From Octopus bimaculoides (Eukaryota): a DNA stretch of 64,000 nucleotides. The stretch lies in assembly GCF_001194135.2 (NCBI RefSeq), contig NC_069005.1, forward strand, positions 15,687,797-15,751,796. The letters run 5' to 3'. Shown piece by piece: positions 48,034-56,364 of the stretch. A program made the translations under genes and the position numbers. Numbering within the stretch: the first letter of the stretch is position 1; every line of letters begins with the position of its first letter. The notes below the pieces were generated by a model. That model was given only the letters and a program-made list of their open reading frames with translations. It ran no database searches and was not told where the DNA came from.

Positions 48034-49540
48034 CACTGAACGGCAAAAGAAAACACGATTTTTTTCAAATGTCACTTTTATATGGTAAATTCTGAAAATT
48101 TATTTTGGGGATGTAAGTGTAAATATTCCAAGACATGCTGGTTTATGGCTGAGACCCAAATTGCAGGTAACTTTTTGACTTTCCCTGTAACAAGATAACA
48201 AAACATAGCTGCACTGAATGCCGTGGGTTGCAGTCGCAAACAACTGTCATGAAAACTGAAATGCACGTGCAACTCGTGGCGGTTATGGGTATAAAAATCA
48301 ATTTGAACCACATTTCTAGCATTTGTAATTTGGACACATCAGGTATGACCCGATTGTCAGCAGTGCAGAGAAAACAAATAGGACAGCATGCCCTGGTCAT
48401 TGTGAAAGCTTACAATGTCCATTTATCACCTGCAACAGTGATACAACACCACCAACAGTACTGCAGATTGTGCCTGCAGAGGGTGTCCCTGAGTGACCAT
48501 GCCCAGGCAGGACTGCTTCATTCATCTGCAACTCCTCCATGATTGCTTCAGACTAGCCAGTGTGACAGCTTGCGAGACCATTGGTACTGGACAGCGATCC
48601 ATCAGTGACTACATGGTATGACATCAACTGGCTGCCAACAACCTGCATTGTCGTCCATCCTGCTCGAGGGCCTGTCCTTATTGCTCACCACCGTCAGGCA
48701 CAACTACAGTGGGCTACACTGCACCGACATTGATGGCATCAACAATGGCAGTTGACAGTCTTTTCTGACGAGAGCTGGTACTACGTTTCCACCTCAGATG
48801 GCAGAGTGAGGGTGTGGTGAAGGAGGGTGAATGCTACAGAGACACGTGTCATGGAGAGAGATGTGTGGAGTGGCCAAAGCATCATGGTTTGGGATGCTAC
48901 AGGCCTGAATCAGAGAACTGGGCCCCATGTGTTCCAAAATGTTGGTGCAGGCAGAGGGAATGGCATCACAGCACAGCGCTATGTTGACCAGATCCTAAGA
49001 CCTCACATTGTCCCCTTCTTTGCGCATCACCATAGCCACATGTTCCAACAGGACAATGCTCCCTCCAACACGGCCAGAGTCACCATGGACTTCCTGTATC
49101 AGCACAACATCAGAACCATGCCATGGTTGGCTCTCAGCTTGGATTTGAACCCAATTGAACACCTGTGGGAGGAAATCTAGAGATGGCTGAACCAGGTGGT
49201 CCCAAGGTCAAGAACTCATGTGGAACTGGAGGCAGCTTTCCTCAGGGTATGGGCACAGGTGCCAATGGCTTTTGCAAACTGCCTCATGTACTCCAAGTAC
49301 TGATGGTATATGGCTGTTTTGAATACCCAGGGAGGGCATACATGGTATTGGACATGTCACGCCCTACAATCTTGATGTGCTGGATCCACCCACTACCAGA
49401 ACACATGACAAGAACCCATAGACTGTGGTGAAAATGCATCCAAGAAATTGACTCTCAGATTTATCAAAATTTATTTCTGACATATTGAAATTAAAACATA
49501 TTTCAGTCATACACGTCTTGTGTTTCTTTTGAGTTCAGTG
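48034..49540 (+). mobile_element. Tc1-family DNA transposon, full length, decayed
   Basis: TIRs CACTGAACGGCAAAAGAAAACAC and rc CACTGAACTCAAAAGAAACAC. TA TSDs at 48032-33 and 49541-42. 1507 bp. Confidence 0.92.
48345..49351 (+). pseudogene. Tc1 DD34E transposase pseudogene
   Basis: MTRLSAVQRK start; FSDES; FQQDNAP-(34 aa)-SLDLNPIEHLW; GGHT end. Multiple stops and frameshifts. Confidence 0.9.
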
Positions 49541-53660: not shown

Positions 53661-54310
53661 CTTGTTTGTTACAACCCTTGAGGTGAGTATTGCCCCCCAC
53701 CACCCATCCTTTTCTTTGTTTCTGCTTCCTCCCCATCCCTGTGATAAGAAGGCCAGGATTTGAACTTAAAACAGACGAAGCCAGAATGAATGTTGCTAAG
53801 CAACCTGCCCAATGATAATTCTGGCAGTCCACTAACCTGTATAGGTTCTTTATTAACTGACCTGAAGGAGCGAAAGGAAAAGTTGATCTTAGCAAAACTT
53901 GAACTTGGAGTACAGTGATTTGGAGCATTGTCGTTCATCATTTAACATCCAGTCTCCATGCTGGCATGGGTTGGATGGTATGACACAGAGCTGGCTAGCA
54001 GGGAGTTGCCTGGAGTCAAACTGTCTGTTGTGGCATAGTTTCTATAGCTGGATGCCCTTCCTGATGCTAAAAAGCTGGGTGCTTTTACATATCACCGTAA
54101 TTCAGTGGTTCTCAACCAGGGTCCATATGACCCTTGAGGATCCATATAATATGATTTTACTGTTAAGATTTATGTGCAATGAACTGGTTTGTGATTTGGC
54201 AACAAGCCCAACAGTTTTGTTGGGAGGGAATTAGTCAATCCCATCAAGCCCGGAGCTTAAATGGTACTTGACTTACATACCCTAAAAAGATAAAAGGAAT
54301 AAAATTTAAT

Positions 54311-54881
54311 ATTCATAACCACTTTAATATGGCTGTTCACTTGAGTGGACTCTACTGCGATTTTTTTAACCCCAAGAGGATATCTCCTCTAGCTGGTTAA
54401 CAATGCACAGCTGCATCCGATAAAATTACGAGCAGGGGACAAACCCCTACCATCTCCTAAAATGACTGTGAATATTACTTGTCAGTACAACTACTGCAAG
54501 GATCTCTTAGAGAGATTTTAGACGGAGAATTTTTGCTTGTTGCAAAATCAGCAACTGTGTGTTCACATGAAATACATATATCGAGTGCAGAAATGAGCTG
54601 CTATCATCTCTAGCAGACGAGGTGTCCAGTACTGAGGAATGGCAGAAATAGCCTGAAACCAGGACTGGTCTACTGGTCCTGTCGCTAGGAGATGGTAGGG
54701 GTTCGCTCCCTTGCTTGCAATTTTATTGGGTGCAGCTGTGCATCATTAACCAGTTACAGGAGATGTCCTCTTGGGGTTAAAAAATCGCAGTAGAGTCCGT
54801 TCGAATGGACAGCCATGTTAAAGTGGCTATGAATAGGACTTGTCAGTATAACTACTGCCTTGATCTCTTAAAGAAATTTTA
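54311..54881 (+). mobile_element. Non-autonomous hammerhead-bearing retroelement (retrozyme-like), 5'-inverted, ~1.6 monomers of ~361 bp
   Basis: Perfect direct repeat GAATAAAATTTAAT at 54297-54310 and 54882-54895 (TSD). 54311-54459 is an inverted copy (~87% by manual alignment) of 54686-54834. 54469-54522 directly repeats 54830-54883 (46/54). Central hammerhead; no ORF. Confidence 0.78.
54616..54683 (+). ncRNA. Type I hammerhead ribozyme, complete core
   Basis: Stem I CCAGTA(54626-31)/TACTGG(54671-76), extended by GACGAGG/CCTGTC across a TGT/T internal loop. Core CTGAGGA 54632-38. Stem II A(T)GGC/GCCT with loop AGAAATA. GAAA 54655-58. Stem III ACCA/TGGT with loop GGAC. Cleavage triplet GTC 54668-70. 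Confidence 0.88.
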
Positions 54882-56364
54882 GAATAAAATTTAATTTGGC
54901 CATATTATTCTACCAGTTTTATGTTCAAGATCACTAGATCCAGCCTTTCACACCAATCTTACAATGTTGTTCTAAAAACAACATTCTCATCATCGAAATA
55001 TCAAAGGTGTGGGATAATGCATGGTTAATTTAAAACAATGCTAAAGGGTTAAATCACACACTATGGTCTTCTGATCTTTTTTTGACATTGGACAGTGCTT
55101 TAAGAAATTCACAAAGTTAGGACAGTCCTATCTGGAATGTCTTTGATCATAGTTCTGACCAATCATACATGACCTGGGGGTAAACAGCAACAAAAGCAAC
55201 ATCAGCAACAAATAGTCTTTGAACAATGTAATAAGTGTTCGTTATACTGTTTACAACTTTATACATCACTGCTGCTGCCACCAGCACCACCATCACTACC
55301 ACACCAACACCATCACCATCACAGCTTTAGACATCATCAACAGCATCACAATTATCAAAGTTTACCAAAGAATTAATAAACCATTTGAAGCAATACTTTA
55401 GAATCTAAATATATGAAAGGAATTACACCTCGCTTTTACCATTCCAAATAAGGCATTTGCTGTTGATGTTGTAGTTACGCAGCTTAACCTCAGGTCAGCC
55501 CTGAGTTTAGCAGCAGATCAAAGTAGTATGCCAGAAAGAGATTTCCTCATAAAAAATGGCAGAATGATGGACTGAATGTTAAAAAGTATCTGATTTTAAC
55601 TTCCTATGACGTAGCAATTAGTAAACAACTGTTTGATATTGATCTCAAACATTTGTACACTAATTAGTAGTGTGCAGTCAAGCTTTTGTCTGCCCAAAGC
55701 ATTTTCATAAATTTGTCCTAAACACCCAGGCTTGTTTTTAGACTTTTAATTAACACTTATGCCATACATCCCGAGTTAATATAAAGCTTTCCTTTCGCAA
55801 AGTCCGAAGTTATTCTGGTGGTTGAAAAAATAGGATAAGTTTATCATATATGATTCATGGACAGCAAAAGAAATTTATCCACTCTGCTGGGTGGTTGGTG
55901 TTAGGAAGGGCATCCAGCCATAAAAGCCAAACAGAAGTCTGGTATAGGCACCTGCCTGGCCGGCTCCTGTCAAACCACCGAACATGTGATGCACAGGACA
56001 GGCAAAGGATTAAAGAGATGATGAGTATACTCAATTACACTCTGAACCCCAGAACATAACCAGTACTTTATTTTCATTAAGCTTCTTCTTCAGAGGATAA
56101 AATACAATGTCTACTCTGGTGGGACTTGAACTCACTCAGAGCATGCTGCCAACACTACTACCATCAACACCACTACTGCCATCACCACTACCATAAGCAT
56201 CATATGCTCCCTTTTCCATGTTGGCATGGGTTGGGCGAGCCTAAGCCTTTACCAGTTTGATTCAGTTCTTATCTGGGGTTACTCTCCTCCTGGAGAGTTT
56301 GAGAAAAACAGCTCAATTGCACATTATCAGGGACTATGTCTCTTATATCACCATCATCATCATC

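What the first reader, a model, noticed from the sequence alone, without database searches (positions are those of the whole stretch)
54297..54895. Candidate retrozyme-like element: TSD-flanked, hammerhead-bearing, longer-than-monomer insertion with a 5' inversion
Seen: a 571-bp non-coding insert (54311-54881) between perfect 14-bp direct repeats GAATAAAATTTAAT. Its layout is rc(A)-D-X-HHR-A-D. A (54686-54834) recurs inverted at 54311-54459 (~87%). D (54830-54883) recurs directly at 54469-54522, giving a 361-bp period. Established: metazoan non-LTR retrozymes are non-autonomous tandem repeats of a few hundred bp, each with a type I hammerhead, that yield circular RNAs; TSD plus 5' inversion is the twin-priming signature of target-primed reverse transcription. 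Inference: un-inverting the 5' arm gives a ~1.6-monomer template that starts 8-15 nt after the hammerhead cleavage site and crosses one intact ribozyme junction. That is expected if RT copied a circular monomer more than once around, or copied a partially cleaved multimer. I do not know of a described octopus family of this kind.
Basis: partly seen in the sequence, partly recalled or inferred. Interest (0 to 1): 0.9.

Follow-up and report, generated by a model that had tools for sequence, protein, structure and literature searches.

The report
Old hammerhead-bearing retrozyme-like retroelement insertion
This is a real but old and decayed insertion of a short, non-coding mobile element that carries a hammerhead self-cleaving RNA motif, a new member of a known kind (animal "retrozymes", relatives of Penelope-like elements), and not a new kind of element.

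Summary
There is a perfect 14-bp direct repeat (54297-54310 / 54882-54895). A 150-nt inverted arm matches segment A at 87%. A 65-nt direct repeat gives a 361-bp period. One complete type I hammerhead motif is present (CUGAGGA 54632-38, GAAA 54655-58, cleavage after C54670).

A descriptor scan finds only this motif in the window, against 0.003 expected by chance. No Rfam hammerhead model reaches its threshold.

The family has several hundred copies in the source species and occurs in three related species. Two of them share this same insertion. Family reads restore the canonical G10.1-C11.1 pair. They vary mainly at positions the ribozyme tolerates. They also show A-D-X head-to-tail continuity. 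The majority-sequence unit folds unusually stably as a circle (z = -6.4).

All three junctions carry 2-4 nt microhomologies. A partial tandem plus an inverted 5' copy is the published insertion signature of Penelope-like elements (PLEs). Animal retrozymes are thought to derive from PLEs.

Circular RNA and self-cleavage were neither shown nor excluded, and RNA reads are few. The mobilising partner is unidentified.

Verdict: new member of a known kind, moderate interest.

The parts
54297..54310 (.). Left copy of the 14-bp target-site duplication GAATAAAATTTAAT. Its last 4 nt (TAAT) are also complementary to ATTA at the A/D boundary of the family majority sequence, giving a 4-nt microhomology.
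   Evidence: Inverted pair I5 extends the homology back to 54307. Family read depth collapses here.
54310..54459 (-). Inverted copy of segment A, the 5' inverted arm. It reads from A's 3' end at the TSD to A's 5' end at 54459.
   Evidence: 86.8% to 54686-54835; 10 arm-private, 8 A-private and 3 shared differences from the family majority. This means both arms were made in one event and then decayed about equally.
54458..54522 (+). Partial upstream unit: the last 17 nt of A plus segment D (D1). This is the pseudo-LTR-like partial tandem. The junction with the inverted arm shares TA (54458-59).
   Evidence: 65 nt, 83% to 54819-54883. D1 and D2 each differ from the majority at 7 sites; depth falls to about 10 at 54441-54469, so this junction is unique to this locus.
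54523..54615 (+). Segment X, the 5' part of the 361-nt unit. Its 3' half (54580-54625) forms the 5' strand of a long stem that extends hammerhead helix I.
   Evidence: helices 54580-54619 paired with 54680-54721. X is present in fewer copies (depth about 100) than the hammerhead-plus-A part.
54616..54683 (+). Type I hammerhead ribozyme motif. Extended helix I is 54616-31 paired with 54671-83. The core is CUGAGGA 54632-38. Helix II is 54639-54654 with a bulged U at 54640 and a 7-nt loop. GAAA is 54655-58. Helix III is 54658-54669 (4 bp plus a GGAC loop). The predicted cleavage is between C54670 and U54671.
   Evidence: unique hit, 0.003 expected. (all 19 pairs are standard). (family majority has G54639 and C54654, i.e. 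G10.1-C11.1; the most variable sites are N7 54636, bulge 54640, and 54672 A>G which keeps a G.U pair). (weak RAGATH-1-hammerhead alignment with the same architecture). Rfam thresholds are not met.
54686..54835 (+). Segment A in direct orientation. It is the most abundant part of the family. Its 5' part is the 3' strand of the long stem flanking the ribozyme.
   Evidence: depth 400-620 per run against 0-2.6 in unique flanks..
54819..54883 (+). Tail of A plus segment D (D2), the 3' end of the insertion. There is no poly(A). The last GA(A) overlaps the right TSD, a 2-3 nt microhomology.
   Evidence: in other copies, reads that reach 54884 continue into X-like sequence (34 reads, consensus CTAGCATTTTTGCTTGTT), which shows head-to-tail units.
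54523..54883 (+). One complete 361-nt unit (X, hammerhead, A, D). GC content is 43.8%. The longest stop-free stretch is 71 codons (minus strand) and has no Pfam match.
   Evidence: As a circle, the majority sequence folds at -134.9 kcal/mol against -98.9 +/- 5.6 for shuffles (z = -6.4). This copy gives z = -2.8.
54882..54895 (.). Right copy of the 14-bp target-site duplication.
   Evidence: Depth collapses at 54876-54904.

Best explanation
The 571-bp insert is one old, fixed retrotransposition product of a short, non-coding, hammerhead-carrying retroelement. The family fits the animal 'non-LTR retrozyme' class, which is thought to be a non-autonomous derivative of Penelope-like elements (PLEs).

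Proposed sequence of events:
1. An RNA longer than one 361-nt unit served as template. It was either a read-through transcript of head-to-tail units with one hammerhead left uncut, or a circle copied past its start.
2. Reverse transcription was primed at a staggered chromosomal break. First-strand synthesis started on 2-3 nt of homology at the end of D. It ran back 426 nt (1.18 units).
3. A second priming event from the other target end used 4 nt of homology (TAAT/ATTA) at the A/D boundary. It copied segment A in the opposite sense.
4. The two cDNAs were joined on a 2-nt overlap (TA).
5. Repair of the stagger produced the 14-bp duplication.

Since then both halves have diverged about 6% from the family majority sequence. 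The ribozyme core is still intact, but the G10.1-C11.1 pair has become A-U. The locus is not detectably transcribed.

Shown: the repeats, the TSD, the motif, the multi-copy family, its presence in four species, orthologous presence of this insertion in two of them, head-to-tail continuity in the family, and the high predicted structure of the unit.

Inferred: RNA-mediated insertion, the order of priming events, the PLE enzyme as partner, and ribozyme activity and circular RNA in active copies.
For: TSD and boundaries:
- A perfect 14-bp TSD sits exactly at the limits of family homology.
- Chance expectation for such a repeat is 0.01.

Hammerhead motif:
- It is unique in 128 kb of sequence scanned (both strands), with 0.003 expected.

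Family size and spread:
- Raw DNA reads were sampled at roughly 0.7x. Depth is 400-620 over the hammerhead plus A, against 0-2.6 in unique flanks. That indicates several hundred copies.
- Family contigs are abundant in organisms B, C and D.
- Contigs from B (54038-54336) and D (54185-54396) span the left flank-to-insert junction of this very locus.

Family variation fits a hammerhead:
- 81% of reads have G at 54639 and 65% have C at 54654, which restores G10.1-C11.1.
- The other frequent variants are at N7 (36%), at the bulged 10.2 (24% plus 6%), and a G.U-compatible change in helix I (17%).

Head-to-tail units in the family:
- Reads passing the end of D continue into X.
- Contigs cover 54484-54863 in another species, and there is a joint 54884->54531.
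- RNA contigs carry A->D joints with at least 74 nt on each side.

Other inverted arrangements:
- Other loci carry head-to-head A arms (table 5c).

One event, then decay:
- The two A arms carry 8 and 10 private differences and 3 shared ones.

Unit properties:
- GC is 43.8% and there is no coding capacity.
- The majority sequence is highly structured as a circle, z = -6.4, with a roughly 40-bp stem extending helix I.

Literature:
- Animal retrozymes are 150-450-bp low-GC tandem units with type I hammerheads and TSDs longer than 4 bp (PMC7229834).
- PLE insertions are partial tandems, often with an adjacent inverted 5'-truncated copy (PMC8557442).
- Retrozymes are related to PLE pseudo-LTRs (bioRxiv 10.64898/2026.07.22.740005).
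- Penelope elements are abundant in octopus genomes (PMC13282606, PMC8967140). This applies only if the window really is from an octopus, which I could not verify.
Against: - No Rfam hammerhead model reaches threshold. The best is 11.6 bits against 56.3.
- The hammerhead fold is about 7-9 kcal/mol less stable than an alternative local fold.
- Within the family, core G and C positions show the same 6-10% transition decay as stem positions. There is no extra conservation of the core among dead copies.
- RNA support is weak. There are 24-51 family reads per roughly 1.8 Gb of RNA-seq. Reads cross the cleavage site. There is no pile-up of ends and no signal specific to circles.
- This locus's own 31-mers are absent from RNA runs.
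- No reverse transcriptase or GIY-YIG remnant is nearby. No YxDD motif occurs in any long, non-repetitive stop-free stretch of the window.
- No sequence link to an autonomous PLE or LINE could be tested.
- The inverted arm lacks D. The simple picture of an 'inverted 5'-truncated copy' would be expected to include it.
- No 30-40-bp PLE 'tail' is seen.
- X and D are present at only about one fifth the depth of the hammerhead plus A. Either many copies have diverged or different flanks, or this copy's own divergence lowers read mapping.
Confidence: 0.7

Rival explanations
1. The element is the same kind, but it was mobilised by a LINE (for example RTE, CR1 or Dong-R4, all abundant in cephalopods) through classical L1-style twin priming. 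Segment D would then be a LINE-derived 3' recognition tail, and no Penelope-like enzyme would be involved.
For: - The TSD is 14 bp.
- The 5' inversion comes from template immediately upstream of the direct part, with a 17-nt overlap.
- All three junctions show microhomology.
- These features match the geometry described for L1 twin priming (my own knowledge of Ostertag & Kazazian 2001, not re-read here).
- LINEs dominate octopus retrotransposons (PMC13282606).
Against: - There is no poly(A) or simple-repeat tail at 54883.
- Type I hammerheads in animals are linked in the literature to PLEs, not LINEs (PMC7229834, PMC8557442, bioRxiv 10.64898/2026.07.22.740005).
- Head-to-tail partial tandems are typical of PLE products, not of LINE-mobilised SINEs.
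- No similarity of D to anything else in the window.
Confidence: 0.15
2. It is not an independent non-autonomous family. It is a severely 5'-truncated insertion of an autonomous Penelope-like element, so that only its terminal, hammerhead-containing non-coding region (pseudo-LTR) is present.
For: - PLE insertions are frequently 5'-truncated, and the hammerhead lies in the pseudo-LTR (PMC8557442).
- The hammerhead-plus-A part is about 4-5 times more abundant than X and D. This would be expected if that part is shared with other, longer elements.
- Some contigs carry hammerhead plus A embedded in unrelated flanks of 150-350 nt (records 15, 21, 24).
Against: - The unit closes on itself. D is followed by X, and X by the hammerhead and A, both in this copy and in other copies and species. 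That gives a 361-nt period with no room for an ORF.
- The ribozyme has a 4-bp helix III and a 6-bp helix I with internal loops. This is the 'canonical' retrozyme type, not the minimal dimeric PLE type described in PMC7229834.
Confidence: 0.1
3. The hammerhead resemblance is fortuitous or long dead. The element is an ordinary structured short repeat or satellite unit, and its inverted and tandem layout arose by DNA-level rearrangement (replication slippage or fold-back repair), not by reverse transcription.
For: - Rfam thresholds are not met.
- The alternative fold is more stable.
- No RNA evidence for cleavage or circles.
- No extra conservation of core G and C among copies.
Against: - Chance expectation for the full motif is 0.003 per window.
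- The family majority restores the canonical G10.1-C11.1 pair.
- Frequent variants fall at N7, at the bulge and at a wobble-compatible site.
- A 14-bp TSD lies exactly at the homology limits, with microhomologies at all junctions.
- Copies are dispersed, each in a different flank.
Confidence: 0.05

Closest known systems
Metazoan non-LTR retrozymes (Cervera & de la Pena 2020, PMC7229834)
   Same: - Non-coding unit of a few hundred bp (361 nt).
- Low GC (43.8%).
- One type I hammerhead per unit, with helix sizes of the 'canonical' kind.
- Head-to-tail unit continuity in the family.
- A TSD longer than 4 bp.
- A predicted highly self-paired monomer RNA.
   Different: - At this locus there are only 1.18 direct units plus an inverted arm, not an array.
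- Circular RNA and high expression, the hallmark of the described families, were not detected in the runs available.
- No cephalopod family appears in the papers I could search.
- Helix II has a bulged U. This copy has A-U at 10.1-11.1.
Penelope-like element insertions with pseudo-LTRs (Craig et al. 2021, PMC8557442)
   Same: - A partial tandem of the 3' part of the unit upstream of the full unit.
- An inverted 5'-truncated copy directly adjacent at the 5' end.
- A hammerhead in the terminal non-coding region.
- No poly(A).
   Different: - No RT/GIY-YIG ORF, so it is non-autonomous.
- The hammerhead is the canonical monomer-type, not the minimal type.
- The inverted arm lacks the 3' terminus (D).
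- No 30-40-bp tail.
- Sequence relationship to any autonomous PLE is untested.
L1 twin-priming inversions
   Same: - TSD.
- An inverted 5' segment taken from template just upstream of the direct 3' segment.
- A small duplication (17 nt) and microhomology at the junctions.
   Different: - No poly(A) tail.
- The template is a repeated or circular unit, not an mRNA.
- The likely enzyme is a different class of reverse transcriptase.
Plant LTR retrozymes (Cervera et al. 2016, PMC4918200)
   Same: Non-autonomous elements whose RNA is bounded by hammerheads and can circularise.
   Different: - Plant elements have type III hammerheads inside true LTRs.
- They have PBS/PPT motifs and 4-bp TSDs.
- Their GC is above 55%, and they have Gypsy partners.
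- None of this applies here.

Membership tests
Hammerhead ribozyme (type I) | Conserved catalytic core: C3-U4-G5-A6-N7-G8-A9, G12-A13-A14, A15.1-U16.1, and H17 at the cleavage site | tested here: met
   CUGAGGA 54632-38, GAAA 54655-58, U54669, C54670. The weak RAGATH-1-hammerhead alignment places the same core.
Hammerhead ribozyme (type I) | Three helices around the core, with helix I open (type I topology) | tested here: met
   Helix I is 6 bp plus extensions, helix II is 4 bp with a bulged U, and helix III is 4 bp. All 19 pairs are standard in both this copy and the majority sequence. The descriptor hit is unique, with 0.003 expected.
Hammerhead ribozyme (type I) | Score at or above the curated threshold of an Rfam hammerhead covariance model | tested here: not met
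   No hit at gathering score. None at E<=10 over 801 nt. Only RF03152 at 11.6 bits against 56.3 on the 77-nt stretch.
Hammerhead ribozyme (type I) | Variation among relatives respects the structure (free N7, canonical G10.1-C11.1, compensatory or wobble changes) | tested here: inconclusive
   Read-level frequencies fit: N7 36%, G10.1 81%, C11.1 65%, 54672 A>G 17%. Linkage between sites cannot be seen in the tables. Core G and C decay like stem G and C.
Hammerhead ribozyme (type I) | Site-specific self-cleavage | not testable with these tools
   Needs in vitro transcription. RNA reads cross the site without a drop. One RNA contig ends exactly at 54670 (record 10), which is anecdotal.
Metazoan non-LTR retrozyme | Short (150-450 bp), low-GC, non-coding unit carrying one type I hammerhead | tested here: met
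   361 nt, 43.8% GC. ORFs are at most 50 aa from a start codon, and the 71-codon stop-free stretch has no Pfam hit.
Metazoan non-LTR retrozyme | Units arranged head to tail (dimers to multimers) at dispersed loci | tested here: inconclusive
   This locus has 1.18 direct units. Family reads and contigs show A-D-X continuity. Array lengths could not be measured because no assembled genome or long reads were available.
Metazoan non-LTR retrozyme | Abundant monomeric circular RNA | tested here: inconclusive
   Low RNA depth and no circle-specific signal in three raw RNA-seq runs and four RNA contig sets. Library selection is unknown. No RNase R or total-RNA data were available.
Metazoan non-LTR retrozyme | Highly self-paired monomer RNA | tested here: met
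   Circular fold of the majority unit: -134.9 against -98.9 +/- 5.6 kcal/mol, z = -6.4, 65% paired.
Penelope-like element (as insertion type) | Partial tandem (pseudo-LTR) plus an adjacent inverted 5'-truncated copy | tested here: met
   54458-54522 duplicates 54819-54883. 54310-54459 is inverted A. Other loci also show head-to-head A arms.
Penelope-like element (as insertion type) | ORF encoding a PLE reverse transcriptase and a GIY-YIG endonuclease | tested here: not met
   No ORF in the insert. No YxDD motif in any long, non-repetitive stop-free stretch of the window. The element could therefore only be a non-autonomous derivative.
Penelope-like element (as insertion type) | Sequence similarity of its termini to an autonomous PLE of the same genome | not testable with these tools
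   No eukaryotic genome or repeat library could be searched. The protein-handle attempt and the metagenome pattern scan found nothing.

The most novel reading that the evidence does not exclude
This locus may be a molecular fossil of how a retrozyme integrates. On this reading, the cDNA was made from an RNA whose 5' end lay at or near a hammerhead-cleaved end. The inverted arm stops 15 nt after the cleavage site. The RNA ran through a second, uncut ribozyme. Such a template would be a circle copied more than once around, or a partly processed multimer. Both target ends would have served as primers. That would be the first single-locus structural evidence for the proposed circular or multimeric transposition intermediate of animal retrozymes. 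It would also be a previously undescribed cephalopod family.
Probability: 0.25. Interest if true: 0.55.

Novelty: new member of a known kind. Interest (0 to 1): 0.35.

Why it matters
Animal retrozymes are a recently recognised class. Two things about them are still argued mainly from co-occurrence and sequence similarity, mostly in vertebrates: their integration mechanism and their link to Penelope-like elements.

This locus is a clean, TSD-bounded single insertion. It shows a partial tandem, an inverted arm and microhomology at every junction. It therefore ties a canonical-type hammerhead unit to the PLE-style insertion architecture in a mollusc-like genome.

The family gives a concrete 361-nt unit to test for self-cleavage and circular RNA. 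It does not change the overall picture. It extends a known class to a new lineage and offers a convenient model locus.

Tried and rejected
- tRNA or SINE origin. A B-box or T-arm-like hairpin (AGGGGTTCGCTCCCCT, 54697-54712 in the majority sequence) suggested a tRNA-derived SINE. ARAGORN finds no tRNA in the window or in a dimer of the majority unit. In the predicted fold this stretch is simply one strand of the long stem. Rejected.\n- MIR869 hit at 54396-54750 (28.8 bits against 330). It only reflects the long inverted repeat. Rejected.\n- Fetching other copies through spurious ORFs. A 59-aa stop-free translation across the hammerhead and A gave no candidates in the protein database.\n- Exact-pattern scan of metagenome contigs for the ribozyme core found 0 hits.\n- Long-read runs for measuring arrays: none are served.\n- Orthologous empty site. 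Contigs of organisms B and D carry the insertion junction instead.\n- Paralogous empty site in copies of the flanking repeats. No 'skips 585' joint was seen.\n- 'Opposite strands' joints between 543xx-544xx and 547xx. Most are artefacts of reads from other A copies aligning partly to each arm. The coordinates are mirror images, for example 54424 against 54720. They were not counted as evidence.\n- Search for RT or PLE remnants in the window. There is no YxDD motif. Only a weak DDE_3 transposase remnant was found.\n- RNA read depth at the cleavage site shows no step at 54670/71. The step at 54686 reflects extra copies that contain only A.
Full report
**Observation**

The region was read directly and scanned for repeats.

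- The 14-mer GAATAAAATTTAAT occurs perfectly at 54297-54310 and 54882-54895.
- It is the only exact direct repeat of 14 nt or more within 1 kb in 53800-55400. Composition-matched random sequences give 0.01 such repeats.
- Segment A (54686-54835) recurs inverted at 54310-54459. Identity is 86.8% over 151 columns, E = 3e-46.
- A 65-nt direct repeat (54458-54522 against 54819-54883, 83%) sets a 361-bp period.
- BLASTN of the insert against the whole window finds only these internal matches.

**The hammerhead**

By eye, the motif is:

| Part | Sequence or span |
|---|---|
| Helix I | CCAGUA (54626-31) paired with UACUGG (54671-76) |
| Core | CUGAGGA (54632-38) |
| Helix II | 54639-54654, with a bulged U |
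| Core | GAAA (54655-58) |
| Helix III | CCAG/CUGG within 54658-54669 |
| Cleavage | after U-C (54669-70) |

I wrote a descriptor requiring the core, helix I of at least 5 bp, helix II of at least 4 bp and helix III of at least 3 bp.

- It finds exactly this site on either strand of the window.
- Random windows give 0.003 hits with the strict version and 0.06 with a relaxed version.
- All 19 proposed pairs are standard.

Evidence against:

- No Rfam hammerhead family reaches its threshold.
- None appears at E<=10 on 801 nt.
- On 77 nt, only RAGATH-1-hammerhead aligns. It scores 11.6 bits against 56.3 but uses the same core and helices.
- The minimum-energy local fold is a competing structure, -22 against -13 to -15 kcal/mol.

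**The family**

Organism names are coded in the tools.

Copy number in the source species:

- Raw DNA reads of the source species were laid at 80% identity or better, about 1.9 Gb sampled per run.
- Unique flanks have depth 0-2.6.
- The hammerhead-plus-A part has depth 400-620 per run.
- X and D have depth about 80-130.
- Depth collapses exactly at 54296-54324, 54441-54469 and 54876-54904.
- The family therefore has several hundred copies. The insert limits coincide with the TSD. The junction between the inverted arm and D1 is private to this locus.

Other species:

- Contigs of three other species carry the family abundantly.
- Contigs from organism B (54038-54336) and organism D (54185-54396) span the left flank-to-insert junction of this same locus.
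- The insertion therefore predates those splits, and no empty site is available there.

**Family variation across the ribozyme**

About 700 reads cover each site.

- The majority has G at 54639 (81%) and C at 54654 (65%). This is the canonical G10.1-C11.1 pair. This copy has A-U.
- The other frequent variants fall at three sites:
  - N7, 54636 (36%);
  - the bulged 10.2, 54640 (24% plus 6%);
  - 54672 A>G (17%), which keeps a G.U pair with 54630.
- All remaining sites show only 6-10% G>A or C>T decay, in core and stems alike.

I read the frequent variants as changes that happened in active source lineages. They sit where a hammerhead tolerates change. This is supportive but not a formal covariation test.

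**Unit organisation**

- Reads that reach the end of D in other copies continue into X-like sequence. There are 34 such reads in one run, with consensus CTAGCATTTTTGCTTGTT.
- A contig in another species covers 54484-54863, and a joint 54884->54531 is seen.
- RNA contigs contain A->D joints with at least 74 nt on each side.
- Head-to-tail A-D-X continuity is therefore a family feature.
- Several other loci carry head-to-head A arms with short spacers (table 5c). One of them is transcribed.

Properties of the unit:

- 361 nt, 43.8% GC, no meaningful ORF.
- I replaced this copy's letters with the family majority at 30 sites.
- The corrected unit, folded as a circle, gives -134.9 kcal/mol against -98.9 +/- 5.6 for shuffles (z = -6.4).
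- This copy gives z = -2.8.
- The fold places the ribozyme at the tip of a roughly 40-bp imperfect stem, 54580-54625 paired with 54677-54721, that prolongs helix I.

**One event, then decay**

- Against the majority sequence, direct A has 8 private differences.
- The inverted arm has 10 private differences.
- The two arms share 3 differences.
- D1 and D2 each differ from the majority at 7 sites.

Both halves were therefore near-identical when inserted. Each has since drifted about 6%. This fits the cross-species sharing.

**Junctions**

- Left junction: the last four bases of the TSD (TAAT) are complementary to ATTA at the A/D boundary, as it reads in D1 and in the family majority.
- Internal junction: the two segments share TA.
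- Right junction: the end of D and the start of the TSD share GA. They would share GAA if the template continued into X.
- There is no poly(A).

**Mechanism**

These features fit target-primed reverse transcription of an RNA longer than one unit. A second priming or template switch then produced the inverted arm.

- Un-inverting the arm gives a template of about 559 nt (1.55 units).
- The same layout, a partial tandem with an adjacent inverted 5'-truncated copy, is the described hallmark of Penelope-like element insertions. Their pseudo-LTRs carry hammerheads (PMC8557442).
- Animal type I hammerhead repeats were defined as non-LTR retrozymes: 150-450 bp units, low GC, TSDs longer than 4 bp, and circular RNAs (PMC7229834).
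- A 2026 preprint argues that these retrozymes are non-autonomous PLE derivatives (10.64898/2026.07.22.740005).
- I found no paper describing a cephalopod hammerhead or retrozyme family.
- Octopus repeat surveys list Penelope elements but do not mention ribozymes.

**What is not shown**

- RNA evidence is thin. There are 24-51 family reads per run.
- Coverage is continuous across 54670/71 and there is no pile-up of ends.
- RNA contigs have word depths of 2-12, and one contig ends exactly at 54670.
- This locus's own 31-mers are absent from RNA runs.
- Circles and self-cleavage are therefore neither shown nor excluded.
- The mobilising enzyme is unidentified. There is no RT remnant in the window, and no searchable eukaryotic genome was available.

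**Verdict**

The retrozyme-like reading is largely right. The 'twin-priming' layout is better described as the known PLE-type insertion architecture. The element is a new member of a known kind. It is old and decayed, and of moderate interest as a clean model locus.

Noticed in passing
window 53908-54069 (extending to about 54177): A very high-copy repeat lies just upstream of the insert. Raw DNA read depth is 10,000-50,000 per run, against about 1 for unique sequence, which implies tens of thousands of copies. It is abundant in all four species and well represented in RNA reads. It is probably one of the major SINE families of this genome. No tRNA or Rfam match was found.
   Followed up: partly
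window 54905-55045: A separate moderately repeated family (read depth about 100-250 per run) starts about 10 bp after the right TSD. The retrozyme-like insert therefore sits between two other repeats. No paralogous empty site was found.
   Followed up: partly
other loci of the family, seen through joints 54400->54767 (+TCC) and 54621/54685 (opposite strands): At least two other family loci are head-to-head palindromes, and both are transcribed. The 54400->54767 joint has 21-32 RNA reads against 2-3 DNA reads at equal sampling. A contig with the 54621/54685 joint reaches word depth 216 in one RNA run. These transcripts would form long hairpin RNAs.
   Followed up: no
window 54697-54712: AGGGGTTCGCTCCC(C/T)T resembles a tRNA T-arm or B box and is strongly conserved in the family. 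ARAGORN finds no tRNA in this copy or in the majority unit. In the predicted fold it is one strand of the long stem beside the ribozyme.
   Followed up: yes
window 48827-49180: A 117-aa ORF gives a weak DDE_3 (Tc1/mariner-type transposase) match, E = 8e-4, below Pfam's cut-off. It is a decayed DNA-transposon remnant. Further mariner-like and LINE endonuclease-like stretches seen by eye near 50-51 kb and 61-62 kb gave no Pfam hit.
   Followed up: partly
whole window: The window contains 3,906 N in several assembly gaps, and many TA/CA-type microsatellites. GC content is 34.7%. No tRNA and no Rfam family reaches threshold anywhere in the 64 kb.
   Followed up: no
RNA run X26, contig record 10 (aligned to 54470-54670): One RNA-derived contig of another family copy ends exactly at the predicted cleavage nucleotide C54670. 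This is a single observation and could be an assembly break.
   Followed up: no
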